NCBI RefSeq assembly: GCF_028641065.1
Contig: NW_026576274.1
Location: forward strand, 62,001-126,000
Direction of reading: 5' to 3'
DNA from: Leucoraja erinacea
Taxonomy: Eukaryota
Length of the DNA: 64,000 nucleotides
Shown here: one piece after another, positions 13,712 through 53,800 of the stretch
Layout: each line of letters begins with the position of its first letter
How positions within the stretch are numbered: position 1 is the stretch's first letter
Made by a program: the position numbers and the translations under genes
Notes under the pieces: generated by a model
Databases searched by the model: none
Told to the model about the DNA's origin: nothing
What the model saw: the letters and a program-made list of their open reading frames with translations, nothing else

Positions 13712-13994
13712 TTTACCACATAAATAATGTTGTATTAATAAATTTTATGGATTTCATTGTCGGATTTATCTCTAAATTATGTTGACACTATTCCTCCTAC
13801 AGTCGTTAAGGCAGATGTGATGCATGGACTCGTTTCCACGGCATGAAATCACAGAGCTTTGATATCTTCACGTAGTCACTCACGTGACTCCGAAGTAAAA
13901 TATTAAGGTTAAACGACAACTTACCAGTTGGAAGTTTGATCATAATTTTATGAGGAGTACGTTGAGGGAATACGTGCCCTCCGCTCCCACCCAT

Positions 13995-16900
13995 AATAAT
14001 AATAATAATAACTTTATTTGTTAAGCATCTTAAAAACAACCAAAGCTGACCAAAGTGCTGTACAGAAAAAAGAAAACAAGCAAGACATCATAAAACAGGC
14101 AGAACAACAGAACATACAACTAACACGAGGCGCATAAATTACATACAAAAATCCAAACAATAAATTAAAAAACATAAAACACAAGTACGAACAACGCAGC
14201 AAAACCAAGCAAATAAAGTTAATAAACAATTCAACACCTCACTGGTCTACAAAGGCCATGGAGAATAGATATGTCTTCAGGAGTGATTTAAAAACAGCTA
14301 GAGAAGGGGCCTGTTTAACGTGCAGAGGCAATTCATTCCACAATCTCGGAGCCGACACAGCAAAGGCACGGTCCCCTCTGAGCTTCCGCTTAGTCTTTGG
14401 CTCAATCAGGAGCAGCTGATCATCTGACCTGAGAGAGCGGGAGGGCGAATAAGGGTGAAGAAGCTCAGATAGGTAGGACGGGGCAAGACCACTTAGGGAT
14501 TTAAAAGTAAATAAAATAATTTTAAAACGAATCCTATACTGAATAGGCAGCCAGTGGAGAGAGGCCAAAAGGTGAGGAACATGATCATGCTTTCGTGTGC
14601 CAGTCAAGAGACGAACAGCTGCATTATGTACCATCTGGAGACGGGCGATGGAGGACCGACTAACCCCCAGATACAGTGCATTGCAGTAATCCAGCCGGGT
14701 GGTAACAAAGGCGTGGATTACCGTCTCAAAGTGCTGCCTTGACAAAATCGGCTTTATTTTTGCCAGCTGCCTCAGATGGAAAAAACCAGATTTAACAACA
14801 GCCCTTACCTGACAGTCAAATCTAAGCTCAGGGTCCACTTTAATCCCCAGGTTCGTGATGTTAGGTTTGAGATATGCAGACAAAGAGCCTAGATCAACAG
14901 GGGGGGCCCCAGAGGTGCCACCAAAGATCATTACCTCTGTCTTGTCATCATTAAATTTTAAAAAGTTCAGTGACATCCAGGCCTTTATGTCACTGAGACA
15001 CTCAAGCAAGAGGCCGACAGAGTGTACACCCCCTTTTCCCAGAGGCACATAAAGCTGACTGTCATCAGCATAAAAGTGGAATGAAATCCCGTGCTTCCTA
15101 AGGATGGAACCGAGTGGGAGCAGGTAGAGTGAAAAGAGGATAGGGCCAAGAACTGAGCCCTGTGGGACCCCCACACGAGAGAGGAGCTGAGGAGGATACA
15201 GAGTCCCCAAGGCTGACACAAAAAGTTCGATCAGCCAAGTACGACCTGAACCACCCCAGTGCTATGCCCCTGATACCCACCCACTGCTCCAAACGGGAGA
15301 TCCGAATTTCATGATCCACTGTGTCAAAGGCAGCTGACAAATCTAAAAGCACGAGGACAACACAGTCACCTTGATCAGTAGCCAAAAAAAATATCATTAA
15401 AAACCCTCAAAAGGGCCGATTCTGTGCTGTGCCGGGACTTAAAACCGGACTGGAAAACCTCCAAAACGTCATGTTCCTCCAAAAAGGCCATCAATTGCCT
15501 GTGCACGATCCTCTCTAGGACTTTTGATAAAAAAGGCAGTTTGGAGATAGGCCTGAAATTCCCAAGAACTGCAGGGTCAAGAGCAGGTTTCTTAATCAGG
15601 GGTTGTACTACTGCATGTTTAAAAAGCGCAGGAACAACACCCGAGGACAAACTGCTATTAACGACAGCGATGACAGATGGTCCTACAGTGGGCAACACCT
15701 CCTTAAACAGCCGAGGAGGAACAGCATCATTCGGAGAACCTGAGGGCTTTGAACGACCAACAATCTCATGCAAAAAGGAGAGAGACACCGGCTTAAAATG
15801 ATCAAATACAGCCGTGCATGGAACAGATACCGAGGGGTCATAAGCAGATGGTGGGATTAAAGCTCTAAGCATAGCGACCTTATCAACAAAAAAGCGGAGG
15901 AAGTTCTCACACACAGCAGGGGATGCCTCCATACAGACTGCCTGCGGGGCATTAAGAACTGTGTTAATGGTGTTAAACAAAACACGAGGGCTGCGGCAGT
16001 CAGAGAGGATAATACCTGAGAAATGTTTCCTCTTAGCAGCTTTCACAACTTTCTGATAATGACACCAACTCTCCCTCAACATTTGAAATGACACCTGCAG
16101 TTTGTCTTTCTTCCACTTCCGCTCAGCTCTACGACACTCGCGCCTGACAGCACGAGTCGTGTCATTCATCCAGGGCTCAAATTTAGTTTTAGGCTGCCTG
16201 AACTTCAATGGAGCCACAGTGTCCAAAACAGTCTGGCAGGTGGAGTGAAGCCATGAGCTAAGCTCCTCTGTATCACACACAGACTCAGGAACGATGGAGT
16301 TCAGAGCAAAAGCAGCCGAGAACTGAACAGCAGTGGAGGGGCTAACAACACGACAGTGCCGAGCAGGAGCGCGAGGTCGAACTGCAGTAGGTGCAATAAT
16401 AACCTCAAATAACACAGGCATATGGTCGGAAAACACGGCATCACAAATCACTAGATTAGAAACGGGCAAACCGTATGATAGAACAAGATCGAGTGTGTGA
16501 CCGTGCTCTTGTGTGGGTCCGGACACAGATTGGACAAGACTAAATGAATCAATGAGATTCAAAAAGTCCTTTGCCATAGGCTTTTCAGGACAACACACGT
16601 GAACATTAAAATCCCCTACAATAAGTACACGGTCATATCTAGGCATGATTTCAGCCAGGAAAATAGAAAAGTCATTTAAAAAGTCCTTATTATACTTTGG
16701 AGGCCGATAGACCAGAGCACACAACACTGTGTTAGAGCCAACCAGCTCAAACAAACTTAATTCAAAACTTGCTAAAGAGGATGAAAGCAATAGCTGTTTA
16801 CATTTAAAATGACTCCTAAAGACAGTAGCTAGTCCTCCACCTCTGCCCGACGTCCGCGGGGAGTTAAGATAGCAGCAATCAAGGGGTAACATCTCAGCAA

Positions 16901-17350
16901 AAGCGCTGGACTCACCAACACCCACCCAGCCATGTCTCAGTCACACAGAGGAGATCTAACCCTCTGGATTCAAAAAAATCTTTCAAAATAAAAGTCTTGT
17001 TCACCAGCGACCTAGCGTTCACCAGGGCAATCTTGACAGGAACAGGCTGGTCCACGGCGTCCGATGTCAGGGGAGCCCGGCACAAGGGCCGCAAGTTGAG
17101 GAGATTTAAACCACGCCTGCGGGGTCGAGGAGAGGAGGGGCCACAAGGGAGGAGCAGTTCTTCCGGGCCAACGGCAGGCAGCAGGCAGCAGCCATCAGGG
17201 TCCAACGAGCGTCGAGGAAGAATAAGAGAACGACCAATCCCAGTCCAGGAAGACGCAGGTAAACTCGCCAGACAAGCCTTCAGCCTCACCAACCGACCGC
17301 CGCGTGTACCCCGGCGACGTTTACGCTTACGCCGAGGAAGTGGAGCCAGG
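13995..17350 (-). mobile_element. L2-clade LINE with near-complete ORF2 (APE+RT), few frameshifts, TSD ACCCAT
   Basis: ORFs 17292, 16925, 15397 and 15219 join into [81 protein letters not shown]. (TTA)n tail; acccat at 13989-13994 and 17351-17356. Confidence 0.95.
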
Positions 17351-23579: not shown

Positions 23580-24130
23580 TGAGGAGTTTGCGCAACAGTT
23601 TGGACTAATAGCTGCCGCACCAAACGAGTTGACGTTGTCCTTAACTCTGCAATGCGCATTATCACAGGAACGCTTAAGTCAAAATATTTGCAGTGGCTCC
23701 CTATCCTCTCTCATATCGTCCCTCCCAGTATACGCACACGGGAGAGGATGTTGAAAGATTATGCACCATCAGGAACCCTGACCTTCCGATCCATGCTGAC
23801 TTGAACATTCTTCCCAACATGCGCCTGAAGTCCCGCAAACACTTCTGGTCTTCAGTCAAATCCCTGGGAAACTTCGTCTCCAAGACTGAGTGTGCAGAGC
23901 CTGGAAGGATGCCAACACCAACAACGGAGAGGTCATCACAGACCACACAGTGAAACCACCGGGATTTGCCTTCCATCGCAACAATGGCTAACCCTGAAAA
24001 GAACCCGCACCCTCCATGCAAGAACAGCGCATCAACGGCATAAGTGGGGGATGACTGACTGTCCTGCTTGTGACTACGGACATCCAGACCAGACCATTCC
24101 ACATATCGTGAATGACTGTCCTGCAGCATT
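23580..24130 (+). mobile_element. Vingi/Ingi-like non-LTR retrotransposon 3' ORF fragment
   Basis: CATVWTNSCRTKRVDVVLNSAMRIITGTLKSKYLQWLPILSHIVPPSIR and LPSQQWLTLKRTRT...HKWGMTDCPACDYGHPDQTIPHIVNDCP (C-terminal zinc knuckle). Confidence 0.65.
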
Positions 24131-31830: not shown

Positions 31831-33421
31831 ATTCTAATCACTATGTGTGAATTTGATCACCAAATGAGTCATACATCCATTTACTTCATTGTGAATGTTC
31901 TGGGCATTCAGATACTTTATCGTGAATTCAGAAGCAGTATGTTTAATGTTATGGTTTTGATATTTTTGTTTTGAATCTTTCACTTTTTTACCTTCTTTCC
32001 CAGTTATTTTGCTGAATACTATTACACATACTCCCTGCTGTTTCCCTTTCCCCAATGCTGAATTCCCTTCACTGTTCCCATTTTCTTACTGAGCTTGTAT
32101 AACATCTCCCCGTAGCACTAATAAACCCATTGCAAAAGTATTGCGTTTTTCCCACCTATTCCACTAAAGGCTCCAAAGACTCATAGATCAATGTATCCAT
32201 TTACTCATGCATGTCCTTTATATTATAATCTATATACTTAATAGTGTATTGCCTAGATGTAATCTGAAGGTTATAATCTTTGAGGTCATTATTTTTTTTA
32301 ATATAATATTTCCCGGTAACCTAAAGTCTATTTCAAGAACTTCCCTTTTTCTACTGGCGTTCTTAGTGTATTGACCCCACCTATGTTTTGCCTTTACTTT
32401 CAGAATCAATTAGCAATCAATTATGTATTTGACATTGTCACCAAGGACCCAACTAAATGCCCTGGAGCCTCAATTACAGGTACCACTATCCCAGTATGTA
32501 CCCCTATCTATAGAATCTTCTGCAATTATGACTGTCTTACTCTTCTTTCTTGGGTTAAAATGGCGTTTACTTTAGTTTACAGATATGTATGTTCCCAGTT
32601 CTGATTGCACTAATCTAACAGCCTCATCCTCCCATCACCAGCAGTACATTAGAGCAGCACAGCAGCTTCATTTTGGTTTGACTGCGCTTGGTGTATAGTG
32701 TGCAGTACCTGTTGCCCCATTACAGGACGCACGTGGAGAGCTTGGAGAGGATGATGACTAGATTTAGGTCTATTAGGTACAAGGAGAGATCGGACATATT
32801 GATTGTTTCCACGGGAATAACAAAGGTTGCGAGGAGACCTGATAAAATAAGATAATAGTAAGGGGCACAGATCGGGGAGACAGTCTGAATATTTCCCCCG
32901 GATGCAAAAATCAAATATCAGAGGGCATTGCTTTATGGTGGGTGGAGATGAGTTTAAAGGAGAGAGTCATACAGCATGGAATCCTTCGGCCCAACATGTC
33001 CATGCCGACCAAGATGTCCCATCTTCAATAGTCCTATTTGTCCACATTTATACCATATCCCTTTAAACCTTTCCTATCCATGTACCTGTCCAAATCTATT
33101 TTTAAGGTTTATTATCTCCAGCCTGAACTGCCTCCTCTGGCAGCTGGTTCCAAATATCCACCATTCTCTGTGAGCAAAAGTTGTCCACGAGTCCCCACAA
33201 AATCTTTACCCTCTCACCTTAAACTTTGCTGACATCTCACCTTTAACATTGCTGACCTCTCAGCTTAAACATTGCTCTCCGTGTCCTCTATTTCTTGATA
33301 TTCCTTCCTCTGGGGAAAGGCCTCTGTTCGTCTACCTAATCTTTCCCCGAATGGACTTATACACCTCTGCAAGATCACCCCTCATCATCCTGCGTTCCAA
33401 GGAATAAAGCACTGGCCTGCC

Positions 33422-33561
33422 CTTCTTATTCTTGCGTATGGCTGCACAGCCTAAAGTTACAGGACAACTTGTTCTATTTGATTTTATTTGATTGTGCACG
33501 CCAAATTGATTGCATTCGTCGAAACAGGGCGGACTACGTGAAGGTTGTAATCTCCCACCCC
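33422..33561 (-). mobile_element. 140-bp ribozyme-headed non-autonomous retroelement, copy B
   Basis: TSD actggcctgYc (33411-33421 / 33562-33572) and AAG-type tail; homologous to 49977-50114. Confidence 0.85.
33508..33561 (-). ncRNA. Minimal HDV-like ribozyme (copy B)
   Basis: GGGGTGG-GA-GATTACA-ACC-TTCACGT-AGT-CCGCCCT-G-TTTCGA-CGAA-TGCAATC = P1, J1/2, P2, P3, L3, P3', P1', P1.1, mini-P4, J4/2, P2'. Confidence 0.75.
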
Positions 33562-33799
33562 ACTGGCCTGTCCGACCTCGTCCAATTGTTCAAGCACTCA
33601 AGCCTTCAAGCCCTGGCAACATCCTCATAAATCCTCTCTGCAGCCTTTCCTTCTTAACAACATACCTCCTATAACAGGGTGACCAAAACTGAACACTATA
33701 ATCCAAATGCAGCCACACCAGCATATTGTGCACCTGTAAACCGACAACGTCCACACTGAATACCCTTGCTGGTGAAGGCCAATGTTGGGGCCGTCTTCT

Positions 33800-49680: not shown

Positions 49681-49976
49681 TTGCAGTGGTTTATATATGT
49701 ACGAAATTCAAGGACTTTATGTTTGTAATGTCTGTGACTGTGGAATCAGACCTGCAGCCGCTGGACGCACAAGCCCATCCACGCCGCCCCGGCGCGCCTG
49801 CTACAGGTGATGTTCCAGTTACAGCGTTTCGATTTCACCATTGTCTACAAAAAGGTCAAGGACATGCACGTAACTGTCAAACGATCAAGGGTCCCAAGAA
49901 AAACCAGCGAACAGCAGCCCTCTGAACAGGACCAGTTCTCGGCAATGGAGGTATCATATGGTCCCACTGAATGCCT

Positions 49977-50030
49977 GGGGTGGGAGATTGCAAACTTCAA
50001 GTGGTCCGCCCTGTTTCAACGAATGCAATC
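49977..50030 (+). ncRNA. Minimal HDV-like ribozyme (copy A)
   Basis: GGGGTGG-GA-GATTGCA-AAC-TTCAAGT-GGT-CCGCCCT-G-TTTCAA-CGAA-TGCAATC. P1 has a G1.U wobble, P2 is a perfect 7 bp, and J4/2 is CGAA. Confidence 0.75.
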
Positions 50031-50114
50031 GACCTGGAGTGCAAAATCAAATTAGATCAAATAGAACAAGTTGTCCAACAACTGTAGGTTGTGCACGCTT
50101 TACACAAGAAGAAG
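49977..50114 (+). mobile_element. 138-bp ribozyme-headed non-autonomous retroelement, copy A
   Basis: Perfect 11-bp TSD actgaatgcct (49966-49976 / 50115-50125) and (aag)3 tail. Confidence 0.88.
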
Positions 50115-50127
50115 ACTGAATGCCTAA

Positions 50128-50363
50128 TGCCCCTGTCCCATTTAGCAAACCTGAACGGGACCCTCTGGAGACTTTGCGACCCACCCAAGGTTTCCGTGCG
50201 TTTCCCGGATGTTCCCGGAAGTTGTTGTCCGTCAACCTGCCTGCTTCCACTACCTGCAACCTCCGGCAACCACCTGCAACCGCCGGGAACCGCACGGAAA
50301 CATTGGTTGGGGCGCAAAGTCTCCAGGGGTTTCAGTTCAGGTTTCCTAAATGGGACAGGGGCA
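50128..50363. mobile_element. PIF/Harbinger-like MITE
   Basis: About 80-bp imperfect TIRs (tgcccctgtcccatttag / ctaaatgggacaggggca) flanked by TAA/TTA. Removal restores the Gypsy frame ECL-SSLEED. Confidence 0.8.
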
Positions 50364-50859
50364 TTAGCAGCCTGGAGGAGGACACAGCCGCTGATGAGAC
50401 TCTACAATTGCTGTCTGCAGTCATCCGGCGTGGCTGGCGGGATAAACAACCAAGTACCCCACTCGCGATTCGCCCATACTTCCAGTTCACGCCAAACTAG
50501 TCCTATAGGACGGAATTATGTTCAAGGGTCACATAGCAGTCAGCCCAGCTGTTCTCCTGGACAACTACTACGATGCCGTCCACAGGGGACACCCCGGTGT
50601 AAAGGCAACCCCACAAGGGGCGCAGAGCATGTTTTACTGGCCTGGTATGACCAAGTATATACGAGAAAAAGTCGAAGTCTGCGCTATCTGTCACAGCCTT
50701 GCGCCACACCAACAGAAACAACCCTTGTTCTCGCACCAGGTTCCGCTTCTGCCGTGGTCCACGGTCGCCAGCGACATATGCGAATGGCATTGAAAACGGT
50801 ACCCGGTTCTCGTCGACTCGTATTCGGGCTGGTTCGAAATTGACCCACTTCAAACCATC

Positions 50860-53800
50860 ATTGTAGAAAAGAAATGACCGTGTTATTTCAACTGAGCTGG
50901 CATTTTGCCCATTTTAATTGGATCATTAATACCCTTTATATTCCAGCTACACAGTGTGATTCCTCCCATTTTCTTTTGTTTATCATCTTGCATTTTCTCG
51001 GATTTTAGTACCCTTATTTATTACGGTGCATCCGTACCTCAGGACTGTGGATATTTGGGGGGCGTTTATATTATTAACTTCCTTGGCAGATCCCTTTTGC
51101 GATTGTCCTTGAAATAAAAACACATATTAGTGACATTTTGTGGTTAAAAAAAATTGAACAAGTAAGATTACAGTGTCTGAAGTATTCGACATTGTAGTGC
51201 GTGTCTCACGCGTCTGTGGGGTCCGACATCTATTCGACTTTCGAAGTTGATGTTGTACAATTAGCTCTGCTCCTTTTATTACTCTAAACCTAAGAAGGCG
51301 GTGCCATTTCAAAATCAATTATATTTCACCCAATTACACTATATATATATATATTCCATTCAGACTTATCAGATCTGTGTTCAGCTACTGTGAAATGTAT
51401 TTATCTAACACTTTATTTATTTATCTAACACTTTCATCTACTAATTATTTACAATTAGTTATATCTTTGATAATAGTAAGTTGTTAGCTGTAAGGGTTAA
51501 CCAGAAACAGGCTCCTGGAATTATGCCAGGTGCCTGAGTCTCCTCCCTTCTTCACACGAACTACATAACACTTAACCTTCCAGTATTATCTACTTTAATT
51601 CTAAAATTTGTCATCTCTATATACGAGCTAGTCATTCTTATTAGCAGATGATTACATTTTGCCCATTAATAGTTCAGATTAGTTTCCATTTGTATTTCTA
51701 TATTAGTATTGTTAATTATTATTAATTATCTATATTTTGTAAAGCTGTTTTAAGATCTTAAACCCCGATGTGTCCATTTGTCCGAATTTTCCACATTCGG
51801 CTCTGCTGTTCATCTCTGCGTTGCTTATCAGTCTTTCCTTTATTTTGAACAAATAATATCCTTGAGTTGAATTCCAAAGCGTCCAAAGGAGATAAGGTGT
51901 TTAGACCATCGTTCGTGGAAATTCTCTTCCATTTTAAACTTTTAGACAGTGGTGTTTCTTACCTTATCTTCAAGTGTTCTCTGTGAAGTAATAATAATCT
52001 TCAGTTTCTGCCACAATCTCTTGGGCATATTTATAAAATGCGTCCGAATTAGTAAAAGTTTTCTCTTTTCCCTTGAAAGTGATGCGCATCCTGGACGGAT
52101 AAAAAAACGCCACATCTTTAACTCCATGAAGAATCTGTCTTGTCTGTTCGAACTGTCTTCTCTTTTGCACGATCCCATAGGAATAATCCCGGAGGAGTTT
52201 GATAGTGTATTTTCCAAAGGTCATCTTCACTCCATATTAGATTTTTTTCATCAGCTCTTCAAGTGCTGAAATGTCCCGAAGTTTGACTATGATCTGTCGT
52301 GGGTGGGCTGGATCTGCTTGTGATCTTGGCTTAAATCTAGGTATTCGATGTGCCACTTCAATTTCCGGTTCCACAGGTAGATTGAGTACGTGTTTGATTA
52401 AGCTGGCAATGAACTCACGAGCGTTGTTCCCCTCTGCCCCTTCTGTTACTCCCAATATTCGTAAATTTTGGCGTCGTGAGCGAGCTTCGAGATCAAGACA
52501 TTTATCTGAAACTTTCGCCAGTTGACTCTTGAGGCTGTCTAGTTCTAGCTTCGTTCCCTGCATATCTTCAGCCATTTGTTCAACAACTGTTTCCATGTCT
52601 TTTATTTCGGTTACATGTGAAGAAACAATTACATGCACAGCCTCAAACTTCTTCTTAGTTTCTTCTTCGCCTTTATTAATTCTCCCCATTAGCTCTTCAT
52701 GCACATCTTCAATTCATTTTTGTACAATGCCAATGCAGTCAATAACTTTTTGATTACCAGCATTAATGTTTGCCATATTTTCCATCAATTTAACATTAAT
52801 ATGTTCCATCATTTTTAAGTTTCCAGCCTCAATATCCTTTCTCAATTCTCTTACCGAGTTCTTTATTATTAGCATAGCGTATTATTAGCATATCAGCAGC
52901 GCGTCAGTTTTTTCAACTTTTTTAAAATGTTCAGTATGTTTAAAAGTATGTGTTTAATGTTCCTTTGTGTGTTTTGTATGGGTGGTGGTGTGGGGGGGGG
53001 GGGGGGGGAGGCAAGGGGGAAAACGCTTCGGTCGCCTCCTCCATGGAGAGGCGACTTTTTCCAGGTCGCCTCCCCCGTGGCCTAACAATAAGGATCGGTG
53101 CGGCCCTTCCCGGAGACGCGCCCGGGGGGCTTCAGCAGCGGGCGCAGCGTGGACTCTCGTCGTGGAGCGGGTGAGCCCTCGCTGGGGTTCGTTGGAGGGG
53201 AGCGCTCCGTTTCGCTGGCCCGGGGAAGCCGGCAGCCTGAAGTTGCAGCCTGAAGTCGCGCTCTGCAGAACCGGGGGGGAGAAGAAGCTTCCACTGCCGG
53301 CCCGCGGCCAACTTTTACCGCGGGGCCGGCATGGACTTAACTTCACCCCTGGGGGGGAGCTTCGACCGCAGGCCCTGCAGTCTACGGTGCTTCTGGCTGC
53401 GGCGGAGACTTTAAACCCGACCGCCGGCCTGCAACTTAAAGCCGCGGTGTCCGGTGAGGAAGAGCCAATCCTGGACTGACTCTGGACTCTGGTCCTGTCC
53501 ACGGGGGGGAAATGGAGGAGGACTGGCCAAATCTTGTGCTTGTGTGCCTTCTGATGAATGCTGTGGTGGATGTTTGTGTTTCATTGTTATTGTGGTTGTG
53601 TGTTCTTTATTATTGTACCGCTGCTGACAACCCAAATTCCACCGACCCTGGTTGTATGATAATAAATTCTATCTAAATTCTATCTAAATTTATCTCCTCC
53701 ATTTCATTTTTCTCCTTAGTAGCCATCTCAGTCTTGGATCTTGTAGCCATTCCAGAATCCACTTCAGAGGTCTGTTCTTCAGTTTTTTTGTGTTTTCAGC

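What the first reader, a model, noticed from the sequence alone, without database searches (positions are those of the whole stretch)
49977..50114. ~140-bp mobile element whose 5' head is a minimal HDV-like self-cleaving ribozyme
Seen: the insert has a perfect 11-bp TSD and an (AAG)n tail. Its first 54 nt parse as a nested double pseudoknot: P1 GGGGTGG/CCGCCCT with a G1.U wobble, P2 GATTGCA/TGCAATC, P3 ACC/GGT, L3 TTCACGT, a 1-bp P1.1, a vestigial TTCG-loop P4, and J4/2 CGAA with the candidate catalytic C. The two copies carry different lesions and their consensus is fully paired. The predicted cleavage site coincides with the first base of the element. Known: HDV-like ribozymes define the 5' ends of R2, RTE and Ingi/L1Tc retrotransposons. 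Inference: this is a SINE-like family with no recognisable tRNA-type promoter that frees itself from host read-through transcripts by self-cleavage, possibly undescribed in this lineage.
Basis: partly seen in the sequence, partly recalled or inferred. Interest (0 to 1): 0.85.

Follow-up and report, generated by a model that had tools for sequence, protein, structure and literature searches.

The report
Ribozyme-headed mini retroposon in skate
A 138-base jumping element in a skate genome starts exactly at the predicted cut site of a stripped-down self-cutting RNA of the hepatitis-delta/CPEB3 type. Public RNA data show molecules beginning at that base, so it probably trims its own front end, although cutting itself has not been tested.

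Summary
Window 49977-50114 is a 138-bp insert with a perfect 11-bp target-site duplication and an (AAG)3 tail. A second copy, 84% identical, lies at 33561-33422 (-).

- **Fold:** the first 54 nt fit a P4-less HDV-like double pseudoknot. A loose descriptor matches at about 1e-5 per position in shuffles.
- **Family majority:** reads and contigs from the whole family show the majority letters repair all three head lesions of this copy.
- **5' ends in DNA:** homology in contigs stops at G1, give or take one base.
- **5' ends in RNA:** 1440 single-cell reads and 476 bulk reads join an adapter-like oligo directly to G1.
- **Relatives:** a motif scan of metagenome contigs found families with the same core and different, still complementary stems. 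One heads a ~3.26-kb APE-type LINE that ends in the same ...ACGAAAGAAGAAG. 11 of 17 pairs changed on both sides and 0 of 500 shuffles reached that.
- **Rfam:** it does not detect the skate copies.

Self-cleavage, the partner LINE in skate and the promoter question remain untested. Non-autonomous retroposons headed by a ribozyme are known (R2 SIDEs, NARTc, RTE/Vingi bipartite elements), so this is a new variant. This scan had already noted the same kind of element on other pieces of this genome (s1-877453, s1-876316 and others).

The parts
49966..49976 (+). 5' copy of the target-site duplication (ACTGAATGCCT)
   Evidence: identical 11-mer at 50115-50125
49977..50114 (+). whole retroposon, copy 1 (138 nt)
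   Evidence: family depth rises from 0-7 reads in the flank to about 700-1000 per strand inside it (table 2)
49977..50030 (+). 54-nt head: minimal (P4-less) HDV-like / CPEB3-core ribozyme fold; predicted cleavage 5' of G at 49977
   Evidence: descriptor and shuffles; covariation; RNA 5' ends
49977..49983 (+). P1 5' strand GGGGTGG (G1 forms the G.U wobble)
   Evidence: pairs 7/7 with 50006-50012; positions 5-7 covary across families
49986..49992 (+). P2 5' strand GATTGCA
   Evidence: pairs 7/7 Watson-Crick with 50024-50030; 6 of 7 pairs changed on both sides across families
49993..49995 (+). P3 5' strand (AAC here; family majority ACC)
   Evidence: 49994 A>C in 711 of 722 and 636 of 655 reads of X24; pairs with 50003-50005 GGT
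49996..50002 (+). L3 (TTCAAGT here; family majority TTCACGT, the same seven letters as L3 in Rfam's CPEB3 consensus line)
   Evidence: 50000 A>C in 731 of 773 reads; Rfam consensus printed
50003..50005 (+). P3 3' strand GGT
50006..50012 (+). P1 3' strand CCGCCCT
50013..50019 (+). J1/4 and vestigial P4 (GTTTCAA here; majority GTTTCGA, a TTCG loop closed by at most 1-2 pairs)
   Evidence: 50018 A>G in 642 of 782 reads; copy 2 has TTCG
50020..50023 (+). J4/2 CGAA; C at 50020 is the candidate catalytic cytosine
   Evidence: C-N-A-A stands before P2' in all families: skate CGAA or CTAA (50021 G>T in 323 of 781 reads), M1 CTAA, M3 CAAA, Rfam CPEB3 CGAA
50024..50030 (+). P2 3' strand TGCAATC
50031..50105 (+). 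body of unknown origin; holds the subfamily-variable middle part
   Evidence: tables 3, 4 and 7 (loose ends at 50054); no significant similarity to the M1 LINE 3' region
50106..50114 (+). (AAG)3 tail; the family DNA consensus of the 3' end reads ...CACACGAAAGAAGAAGAAG
   Evidence: loose ends behind 50098
50115..50125 (+). 3' copy of the target-site duplication
33422..33561 (-). copy 2 of the same family (84% identical), flanked by CAGGCCAGT at 33562-33570 and 33411-33419

Best explanation
This is one old copy of an abundant, non-autonomous retroposon family of a skate. The genome is most likely Leucoraja erinacea or a close relative.

The element is bipartite. Its first 54 nt form a minimal, P4-less HDV-like ribozyme with the CPEB3-type core: L3 UUCACGU, ...CCCUGU, and C-N-A-A before P2'. 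Its 3' end is a LINE-type recognition tail, ...ACGAAAGAAG(AAG)n.

Proposed cycle:
1. A copy is transcribed as part of a longer host or read-through transcript.
2. The head folds into the nested double pseudoknot and cuts the RNA 5' of G1, giving an element-length RNA whose first base is G1.
3. The reverse transcriptase of an APE-type LINE with the same tail copies that RNA by target-primed reverse transcription, leaving a 9-11-bp target-site duplication.

Shown here: the insert boundaries and duplications, the family, the fold geometry, covariation of the fold across related families, DNA homology ending at G1, and RNA molecules whose 5' end is at G1.

Inferred: that those ends are made by self-cleavage, that C at 50020 is catalytic, and which LINE does the copying. 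The two copies in this window each carry stem or loop lesions and are probably dead relics.
For: (1) Boundaries. There is a perfect 11-bp duplication around 49977-50114, and a second copy has its own 9-10-bp duplication starting at the same G.

(2) Geometry. The loose HDV-like descriptor matches at about 1.1e-5 per position in 40 shuffles, and it starts exactly on the first base of the insert.

(3) Family majority, from reads and contigs laid at 80% likeness or more. The only head positions where the majority differs from this copy are 18, 24 and 42. Each change repairs P3, L3 or the TTCG loop. The two listed polymorphic head positions, 8 and 45, both lie in unpaired joiners.

(4) DNA 5' ends. 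In contigs, unlike letters begin before 49976 or 49977 in 84+118 contigs of X1 and 114+102 of X3. Their flanks are heterogeneous (agreement 0.35) (table 7).

(5) RNA 5' ends (table 7).
- In X22, 1440 reads carry one 30-letter oligo ending ...GAATGGG directly before 49977 (agreement 0.82). Only 177 reads carry heterogeneous upstream sequence.
- In X24, 476 reads show ...CAGAGTACATGGG before 49977, against 362 read-through reads.
- The DNA contigs show no such oligo.
- The full GGG of the oligo precedes all four G of the element. That argues against internal strand invasion.

(6) Strand. 80-89% of X22 reads lie on the element's sense strand (table 2).

(7) Relatives. The core motif scan of metagenome contigs returned 118 loci.
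- Of the 115 parsed, 66 have all pattern-free pairs of P1 and P3 and at least 6 of 7 pairs of P2.
- None of the 18 non-family loci does, and none of them reaches 7/7 Watson-Crick in P2.
- The families have different stems that stay complementary.
- On alignment A3 (skate1, skate2, L001, L020, L100), 95.3% of cells pair and 11 of 17 pairs are changed on both sides. 0 of 500 shuffles reach this, and slid controls give 0-1.

(8) One such family, M1 (79 loci), sits at the exact 5' end of a ~3.26-kb APE+RT LINE.
- Across 41 distinct flanks, upstream identity is 0.27 against 0.93 inside the element.
- Pfam finds RVT_1 at 44.9 bits.
- Its 3' end is ...CAAACGAAAGAAGAAGA.
- L047 and L073 are a 557-nt internally deleted head-plus-tail derivative.

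(9) Rfam scores L100 as CPEB3_ribozyme at 66.5 bits (gathering score 35), L078 at 31.2 and L001 at 25.2. This ties the shared core to that family.

(10) P4-less HDV-like ribozymes are a known class (PMC10879173, Introduction passage).
Against: - No cleavage assay exists, and nothing here tells a 5'-OH end from a primary transcript end. An internal promoter would give the same RNA 5' ends.
- Rfam finds no ribozyme family at either skate copy even at E up to 10.
- Table 6 ('places where many molecules begin') is empty. The 5'-end evidence rests on table 7 and on my recalled identification of the oligo.
- The oligo ends in GGG and the element begins with GGGG, so the end is placed to within about one base.
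- In the bulk run the oligo consensus has an agreement of only 0.43.
- 39 rows of table 3 and 526 rows of table 7 were not shown, so lesser variants and other ends cannot be excluded.
- The related families were retrieved with a pattern that fixes GGGG, L3, CCCTGT and CGAA, so core identity among them is by construction.
- The 3' end of each stretch in A3 was set at the best complement of P2, which favours helix 2.
- P3 and P2 are each broken in one of the two window copies.
- No LINE with this head or tail was found in the window. The body is not significantly similar to the M1 LINE 3' region (z no more than 2.1).
- P1.1 would be a single pair.
Confidence: 0.75

Rival explanations
1. The head is mainly an internal promoter, of Pol III type or a Pr77-like Pol II element. 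RNA 5' ends at G1 would then be transcription starts, and the HDV-like fold would be vestigial or secondary. The two functions could also coexist, as described for the first 77 nt of L1Tc/NARTc.
For: Template-switch junctions do not tell a primary from a processed end. L1Tc/NARTc combine a promoter and a ribozyme in the same 77 nt (PMC3383444, abstract seen in the listing). The stretch GTTTCGACGAA faintly recalls a B box; that is a recalled consensus, not a call.
Against: There is no tRNA, 7SL or 5S similarity. The same core heads LINEs and other elements with quite different stem sequences that stay complementary. That pattern is what RNA pairing predicts, not what a DNA promoter predicts. 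Read-through transcripts entering the element from many flanks exist: 362 reads in X24 and 177 in X22.
Confidence: 0.12
2. The fold is a chance resemblance in an ordinary short retroposon, and the RNA ends at G1 are artefacts of library making or of mapping a repeat family.
For: Both window copies have imperfect stems. Rfam is silent. The loose descriptor also hits 4 other places in the window that look like chance. The element's G-run lies next to an oligo that ends in GGG.
Against: - The descriptor rate is about 1e-5 per position, and the hit is on the very first base.
- The family majority repairs the lesions.
- Covariation gives 0 of 500 shuffles and slid controls of 0-1.
- The oligo junction is seen in two independent RNA studies with two different oligos, and not in the DNA contigs.
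- Strand invasion would not leave 3+4 G.
Confidence: 0.05
3. The copies are retropseudogenes of a host small structured RNA gene, scattered by a LINE, rather than a self-propagating retroposon family.
For: The RNAs are short, abundant, sense-biased and of element length.
Against: The copies end in a LINE-type (AAG)n tail that belongs to the family consensus, not in poly(A). Subfamilies with different middle parts exist (tables 3, 4, 7). The same head-plus-tail plan is seen as a deletion derivative of a LINE in the M1 family.
Confidence: 0.05

Closest known systems
Mammalian CPEB3 ribozyme (Rfam RF00622)
   Same: It has the same HDV-like nested double pseudoknot with G1.U. The family-majority L3 (UUCACGU), the ...CCCUGU after P1 and the CGAAU before P2' are letter for letter those of Rfam's consensus line. 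P1 is 7 bp, P3 is 3 bp, and the spacing up to L3 is the same.
   Different: P4 is missing: 7 nt stand where the Rfam model has a hairpin. The stem sequences of P1 (positions 5-7), P2 and P3 differ. It is not found by the Rfam model at E up to 10. It is a multi-copy retroposon head in a cartilaginous fish, not a single intronic site in mammals.
R2 SIDEs (Short Internally Deleted Elements) of Drosophila (PMC3414825, abstract read)
   Same: They are non-autonomous elements made of a 5' HDV-like ribozyme joined to the 3' end of a LINE. They are propagated by that LINE's target-primed reverse transcription, and the ribozyme defines the 5' end out of a co-transcript.
   Different: SIDEs insert site-specifically in rDNA and are rare. 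The skate family is dispersed and abundant, much shorter (138 nt), P4-less and of CPEB3-type core. Its partner LINE is not identified.
L1Tc/NARTc and other ingi-clade elements with the Pr77/L1TcRz head (PMC3185411, PMC3383444, PMC4035085; abstracts seen in the listing)
   Same: An HDV-like ribozyme occupies the first nucleotides of both an autonomous LINE and its short non-autonomous derivative. The elements are dispersed and abundant.
   Different: These are in trypanosomatids, with a 77-nt head that is also a promoter. No sequence relation was tested here.
Bipartite non-autonomous RTE/Vingi elements (PMC5786205, passages read)
   Same: They keep only the 5' end and the 3' end of a compact single-ORF APE LINE. 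That paper links retention of the exact 5' end to a 5' self-cleaving ribozyme. The M1 family found here (a 3.26-kb LINE and a 557-nt deletion derivative) is this kind and shares the skate tail.
   Different: The skate element has no recognisable LINE 5'-UTR beyond the ribozyme itself.
Minimal HDV-like ribozymes / theta ribozymes (PMC10879173, Introduction passage read)
   Same: They lack the P4 domain and have a similar overall size.
   Different: They were found in metagenomes and phages, next to tRNA genes, with other core letters. That paper says the origin and function of the minimal variants are largely open. Here a minimal variant sits in a eukaryotic retroposon.

Membership tests
HDV-like (delta-type) self-cleaving ribozymes | Nested double pseudoknot in the order P1-P2-P3-L3-P3'-P1'-(P4)-J4/2-P2' | tested here: met
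   the descriptor hit starts at 49977, at about 1.1e-5 per position in shuffles; 95.3% of cells paired and 11 of 17 pairs changed on both sides across families.
HDV-like (delta-type) self-cleaving ribozymes | G1.U wobble closing P1 at the cleavage site | tested here: met
   G at 49977 lies opposite T at 50012. The pair is G.U in all 5 rows of A3, but the search pattern forced it in the three non-skate rows.
HDV-like (delta-type) self-cleaving ribozymes | Unpaired cytosine in J4/2 just before P2' (the general acid/base) | tested here: inconclusive
   C at 50020 is present in both copies, and C-N-A-A precedes P2' in skate, M1 and M3 and in Rfam's CPEB3 line. Its role is not testable by sequence.
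HDV-like (delta-type) self-cleaving ribozymes | Site-specific self-cleavage giving 5'-OH and 2',3'-cyclic phosphate | not testable with these tools
   Only indirect evidence exists: RNA 5' ends at G1 (table 7).
Rfam CPEB3_ribozyme (RF00622) | Score at or above the gathering score (35 bits) | tested here: not met
   There is no hit at E up to 10 at either copy. Related loci score 66.5 (L100), 31.2 (L078) and 25.2 (L001) bits.
Rfam CPEB3_ribozyme (RF00622) | Core letters of L3, J1/4 and J4/2 | tested here: met
   The family majority TTCACGT, CCCTGT and CGAAT equal the consensus line printed.
Rfam HDV_ribozyme (RF00094) | Score at or above the gathering score (50 bits) | tested here: not met
   No hit.
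Classical SINE (head from tRNA, 7SL or 5S with an internal Pol III promoter) | Head derived from a small RNA gene | tested here: not met
   ARAGORN finds 0 genes in the window. Rfam gives no tRNA, 7SL or 5S hit at the copies.
Bipartite non-autonomous LINE / SIDE-type element | 5' end identical to the ribozyme-bearing 5' end of an autonomous LINE | tested here: inconclusive
   The same type of ribozyme heads an APE LINE in metagenome contigs.
Bipartite non-autonomous LINE / SIDE-type element | 3' end shared with the partner LINE | tested here: inconclusive
   Only the terminal ~13-16 nt (ACGAAAGAAGAAG) match the M1 LINE end. The rest is not significantly similar.
Bipartite non-autonomous LINE / SIDE-type element | Target-site duplications and dispersed copies | tested here: met
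   Duplications of 11 bp and 9-10 bp. Hundreds of contigs have unrelated flanks.
Minimal (P4-less) HDV-like ribozymes | No P4 domain between J1/4 and J4/2 | tested here: met
   Only 7 nt (50013-50019) separate P1' from the J4/2 C. The class definition comes from PMC10879173.

The most novel reading that the evidence does not exclude
CPEB3-type ribozymes are not a mammalian invention. They would be an old, widespread family of 5'-end-processing ribozymes of compact APE-type LINEs and their mini derivatives. Skates would keep a highly amplified, still expressed, P4-less version, and the single intronic CPEB3 ribozyme of mammals would be an exapted relic of such a retroposon head. A corollary is that at least some of the 'minimal HDV-like ribozymes' of unknown origin are eukaryotic retroposon heads.
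Probability: 0.3. Interest if true: 0.8.

Novelty: new variant of a known kind. Interest (0 to 1): 0.65.

Why it matters
- **A small, natural test case.** It would be a compact vertebrate example of a retroposon that needs no promoter of its own: about 54 nt of ribozyme plus a LINE tail is enough to spread through a genome.
- **A role for P4-less ribozymes.** It gives a eukaryotic context and a function to these ribozymes, whose origin and role the literature calls open (PMC10879173).
- **An origin question made testable.** The skate, metagenome LINE and mammalian sequences share the core letters, so the origin of the mammalian CPEB3 ribozyme becomes a question that can be tested.
- **An annotation caveat.** Thousands of self-cleaving sites inside host transcripts would cut host RNAs wherever a live copy sits in sense orientation. 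That matters for reading skate transcriptomes and 5'-end data.

Tried and rejected
- **Rfam.** The gathering threshold on the whole window and E up to 10 on both copies gave nothing relevant. The three weak hits at copy 2 (mir-197, CRISPR-DR36, sR1) are noise.
- **ARAGORN** on the window found 0 genes.
- **More copies in the window.** BLAST with word size 7 and a core-motif scan find only the two copies.
- **Family-specific scans.** A motif that includes the mini-P4 found 0 loci in metagenome contigs and 0 in viral contigs.
- **More skate DNA.** The search for homologous proteins with the LINE ORF at 15375-16925 named Leucoraja erinacea for P0005.
- **Partner LINE in the window.**
  - The LINE at 14239-16925 (-) ends in (ATT)n, so it was rejected.
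  - tblastn of six M1 LINE pieces against the window gave one weak hit (39% over 44 aa at 23610-23741). It lies in a degenerate LINE fragment without an AAG tail.
- **Body against the M1 LINE 3' region.** Local alignment z was -0.13 to 2.09 against 300 shuffles. Only the terminal 17 nt align.
- **Clade of the M1 LINE.** Pfam gives only APE and RT and the ESM Atlas gives only 'reverse transcriptase'. RTE versus Vingi is left open.
- **Host of the metagenome families.** No sequence is shared with the window.
- **Alignment A2.** MAFFT shifted the 5' ends of the four rows with a longer J1/2 in this nine-row alignment. Only the five rows with the same spacing were counted with the tool (A3). The other families were counted by my own parse.
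- **The hit at 53006.** This second descriptor hit, behind a G17 run, has no J4/2 and a broken P3. I left it as probable chance.
- **Literature.** One search was badly posed (any 2 of 5 terms) and returned only fish papers. Searches found no paper on ribozyme-headed retroposons in cartilaginous fish. Repbase and Dfam could not be consulted, and I did not ask for any supplementary files. The supplementary figures of PMC5786205 may show RTE and Vingi ends that bear on the tail.
- **Not built.** 'Family majority' means the per-position counts.
Full report
**What is there**

Window 49977-50114 is a 138-nt insert. It lies between two perfect copies of ACGT-level identical ACTGAATGCCT (49966-76 and 50115-25) and ends in AAGAAGAAG.

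A pattern search and BLAST find one more copy, on the minus strand from 33561 to about 33422. It is 84% identical over the whole length. It is flanked by CAGGCCAGT on both sides. One G there can be read either as the tenth base of the duplication or as G1.

No further copy or fragment is in the 64 kb. The element is therefore a retroposon with defined ends, and both copies begin with the same GGGGTGGG.

The genome is most likely little skate. A LINE ORF of the window is 99% identical to NCBI's LOC129709775 of Leucoraja erinacea (P0005). This is an inference from one protein.

**The fold in the two copies**

Copy 1:
- P1 GGGGTGG/CCGCCCT is 7/7, with G1.U and a U.G at position 5.
- P2 GATTGCA/TGCAATC is 7/7 Watson-Crick.
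- P3 AAC/GGT is 2/3.
- L3 is TTCAAGT.
- Seven nt follow, then CGAA, then P2'.

Copy 2 has L3 TTCACGT and a TTCG loop, but P2 GATTACA and P3' AGT.

A deliberately loose descriptor required:
- G1.U and P1 7 bp with no more than 2 G.U;
- P3 3 bp with no more than 1 defect;
- L3 of 6-8 nt;
- P2 of at least 6 bp;
- a C in J4/2.

It starts at 5 places on the two strands of the window, against 1.45 +/- 1.24 (maximum 4) in 40 dinucleotide-preserving shuffles. That is about 1.1e-5 per position. One of the five starts is the first base of the insert. The other four look like chance, and I examined the one at 53006.

**The family, seen through reads**

I laid two raw RNA runs of the same species label and Logan contigs of one DNA run and one run of a second organism on 49850-50160 at 80% likeness or more. 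The runs were X24 (bulk, oligo-dT), X22 (single-cell), X1 (DNA) and X3 (second organism).

Depth jumps from 0-7 in the left flank to about 700-1000 reads per strand inside the element. 2893 reads of X24 and 3685 of X22 were laid, from about 5% and 1% of those runs.

Inside the head, the listed positions where most reads differ from this copy are:

| Position | Place | Change | X24 + mates | X22 + strand |
|---|---|---|---|---|
| 18 | 49994 | A>C | 711 of 722 | 1701 of 1737 |
| 24 | 50000 | A>C | 731 of 773 | not noted |
| 42 | 50018 | A>G | 642 of 782 | not noted |

These changes repair P3, L3 and the TTCG loop. Copy 2's own lesions are not majority letters.

Two listed polymorphic head positions are 8 (G>A, 286 of 651) and 45 (G>T, 323 of 781). 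Both lie in unpaired joiners. 39 rows of that table were not shown, so minor variants in stems cannot be excluded.

**Ends (table 7)**

In the DNA contigs, unlike letters begin just before 49976 or 49977:
- 84 and 118 contigs in X1;
- 114 and 102 in X3, plus 25 at 49978.

Their consensus is A/T-rich with low agreement (0.35). Genomic copies therefore lose homology at G1, give or take one base.

In RNA the picture differs:
- In X22, 1440 reads carry one and the same 30-letter sequence ending ...AGAGTGAATGGG directly before 49977 (agreement 0.82). Only 177 reads carry heterogeneous upstream sequence.
- In X24, 476 reads show ...CAGAGTACATGGG (agreement 0.43, mixed with flanks), against 362 read-through reads.

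From recollection I recognise these as template-switch oligos of full-length cDNA protocols, which are added where the RNA template ends. No call confirms that label.

Three points make an artefact unlikely:
- The oligo is absent from the DNA contigs.
- Two different oligos in two studies point to the same base.
- The oligo's complete GGG precedes all four G of the element, whereas invasion at an internal GGG would merge them.

The G-run still leaves about one base of uncertainty.

At the other end, X22 reads run ...CACACGAA and then into A's (593 reads). DNA and bulk RNA read ...CACACGAAAGAAGAAGAAG there. The single-cell libraries therefore caught element-length RNAs primed at the tail.

80-89% of X22 reads lie on the sense strand.

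Table 6 of the same call ('places where many molecules begin') lists nothing. I attribute this to the reads starting in the oligo rather than at G1.

**Relatives elsewhere**

A family-specific motif found nothing in metagenome or viral contigs.

They fall into several groups:
- **M1**, one large family of 79 loci: P1 GGGGAGG/CCTCCCT, P2 GACAGAT/ATCTGTC, P3 GCC/GGC.
- **M2a and M2b**, 8 and 6 loci: GGGGCCA/TGGCCCT or GGGGGCA/TGTCCCT, GAGCTTC/GAAGCTC, ACC/GGT.
- **M3**, loci L100 and L104: GGGGGTC/GACCCCT, AGCAGAA/TTCTGCT, GCG/CGC.
- **L007, and L078/L105**.
- **18 loci** (15 distinct sequences) that look like chance hits in unrelated DNA.

These last serve as a natural control. Of the 115 loci long enough to parse:
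- 66 have all three pattern-free pairs of P1, all three of P3 and at least 6 of 7 pairs of P2.
- 31 family members have one or more broken pairs.
- None of the 18 non-family loci has P1 and P3 complete, and none reaches 7/7 Watson-Crick in P2.

**Covariation**

MAFFT misplaced the 5' ends of the rows with a longer J1/2 (A2). I therefore counted with the tool only the five rows of equal spacing: skate1, skate2, L001, L020 and L100 (A3).

| Measure | Result |
|---|---|
| Cells paired | 95.3% |
| Pairs changed on both sides | 11 of 17 (P1 3, P2 6, P3 2) |
| Shuffles reaching the observed pairs, cells or score | 0 of 500 |
| Partners slid by 1-3 columns | 40-49% paired, 0-1 such pairs |

Caveats:
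- The four invariant P1 pairs are forced by the search pattern.
- The rows are few (three families).
- Each stretch was ended at the best complement of P2.
- Against that last bias, none of the 18 control loci found a 7/7 Watson-Crick partner within the same search range.

Before P2', every family has C-N-A-A: skate CGAA or CTAA, M1 CTAA, M3 CAAA. The skate polymorphism at position 45 thus falls on the one variable letter.

**Link to CPEB3 and to LINEs**

Rfam scores are as follows:

| Locus | Rfam family | Bits | E-value |
|---|---|---|---|
| L100 | CPEB3_ribozyme (gathering score 35) | 66.5 | 2.7e-16 |
| L078 | CPEB3_ribozyme | 31.2 | not noted |
| L001 (M1) | CPEB3_ribozyme | 25.2 | 0.009 |

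Rfam's printed consensus shows the same L3, CCCUGU and CGAAU as the skate majority. The skate copies themselves get no hit, as might be expected for a P4-less version with lesions.

M1 is the exact 5' end of a retrotransposon:
- In 76 loci with enough flank there are 41 distinct upstream flanks. Mean pairwise identity is 0.27 upstream against 0.93 for the first 30 nt of the element.
- Downstream follow a degenerate APE endonuclease (weak Pfam hits, below cut-off) and a reverse transcriptase (RVT_1, 44.9 bits).
- Homology among copies ends about 3.26 kb from G1 at ...CTCAAACGAAAGAAGAAGA, followed by unrelated sequence.
- L047 and L073 carry a 557-nt internally deleted derivative with the ribozyme head and the last 125 nt of the LINE.

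The skate family's 3' consensus shares the terminal ACGAAAGAAGAAG with this LINE. Beyond that tail the similarity is not significant.

This makes a compact APE-type LINE with a (GAA)n-type tail the likely kind of partner, but none was seen in skate DNA. The window's own LINE ends in (ATT)n. Two untested first-reader notes of this scan propose a Vingi-like LINE.

**How it most likely works**

1. A live copy is transcribed within a longer RNA. Read-through reads from many flanks exist.
2. The head folds, and the J4/2 cytosine promotes cleavage 5' of G1.
3. The released RNA of about 125-140 nt keeps the compact pseudoknot at its 5' end and the LINE tail at its 3' end.
4. A LINE protein uses it for target-primed reverse transcription, giving 9-11-bp duplications.

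Steps 1 and 3 are supported by reads. Step 2 is inferred from fold, covariation and homology. Step 4 is inferred from the duplications and the tail.

The main rival is that G1 is a transcription start from an internal promoter. It is not excluded, and the two functions could coexist as in L1Tc (PMC3383444).

**What is known and what is new**

- Ribozyme-headed non-autonomous retroposons are described as R2 SIDEs (PMC3414825, abstract read) and NARTc (listing abstracts).
- Kojima 2018 states that bipartite non-autonomous LINEs are known from RTE, Ingi, Vingi and R2. [quoted passage not shown]
- P4-less HDV-like ribozymes are a known class of open origin and function (PMC10879173, passage).

New here, as far as six searches of the held library show, are:
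- a vertebrate (cartilaginous-fish), dispersed, abundant family of this kind;
- its extreme reduction to 54 + 84 nt;
- its CPEB3-type core;
- RNA evidence for ends at G1.

Repbase and Dfam could not be checked. The same kind of element had already been noted and followed up on other pieces of this genome by this scan. I used those notes as leads and repeated the key tests on this locus.

**Verdict**

I rate it a new variant of a known kind, with confidence 0.75 and interest 0.65.

Noticed in passing
window 50126-50366: A ~240-bp MITE-like insert directly abuts the retroposon's 3' duplication. It has ~30-bp terminal inverted repeats (AATGCCCCTGTCCCATTTAG...) and TA on both sides. It is itself highly repeated in the DNA contigs (summed depth about 9e5 in X1).
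   Followed up: no
window 14239-16925 (-), tail at 13993-14011: An APE+RT LINE ending in (ATT)n has a 516-aa ORF that is 76-81% identical to reverse-transcriptase proteins of teleosts (Seriola, Dicentrarchus). It is 99% identical to LOC129709775 of Leucoraja erinacea. That is unusually close for skate against teleost and may hint at horizontal transfer.
   Followed up: no
window 53006-53076: This is a second hit of the loose HDV-like descriptor, just behind a G17 run. P1 GGGAGGC/GCCTCCT is 7/7, P2 is 6/6 and P4 is a 6-bp hairpin, but P3 is 2/3 and there is no J4/2. It is probably chance.
   Followed up: partly
window 23610-24130: A degenerate LINE fragment is distantly similar (39% over 44 aa, E 1.8e-5) to the C-terminal part of the M1 LINE. 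It ends in a Cys/His motif, and no AAG tail is visible.
   Followed up: partly
L100:4852-4941 and L104 (same sequence): Metagenome contigs of unknown organism hold a sequence that scores 66.5 bits on Rfam's 'mammalian' CPEB3 ribozyme model. Its P4 is longer and different, and J4/2 is CAAA. No ORF of 150 aa or more lies in the 1.6 kb downstream.
   Followed up: partly
L078:680-760 (+): The same contig that holds a CPEB3-core ribozyme (959-1043, -) also holds a classical HDV-type candidate on the other strand (RF00094, 36.9 bits, below the gathering score of 50, E 0.045).
   Followed up: no
M2 loci (e.g. L027, L030, L071, L023): In 13 loci, only about 100 nt around the ribozyme are shared by all. 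Flanks on both sides differ between groups, and a run of G precedes G1. This looks like a stand-alone ribozyme unit rather than a LINE head.
   Followed up: partly
M1 loci, position -1 and upstream: Across 41 distinct insertion flanks of the M1 LINE, the base before G1 is T in 76%. In 4 of the 41, part of the ribozyme itself is repeated just upstream of G1, as expected from template jumps at the RNA 5' end.
   Followed up: partly
window 49977-50114, RNA against DNA variant shares: Several variants are common in RNA reads but rare by contig depth. Examples are 49984 G>A (44% against 2-7%), 50036 G>C and 50050 A>G (24% against under 1%), and indels at 50031, 50038 and 50052. This suggests that one subfamily dominates expression, though contig depth is a poor measure.
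   Followed up: no
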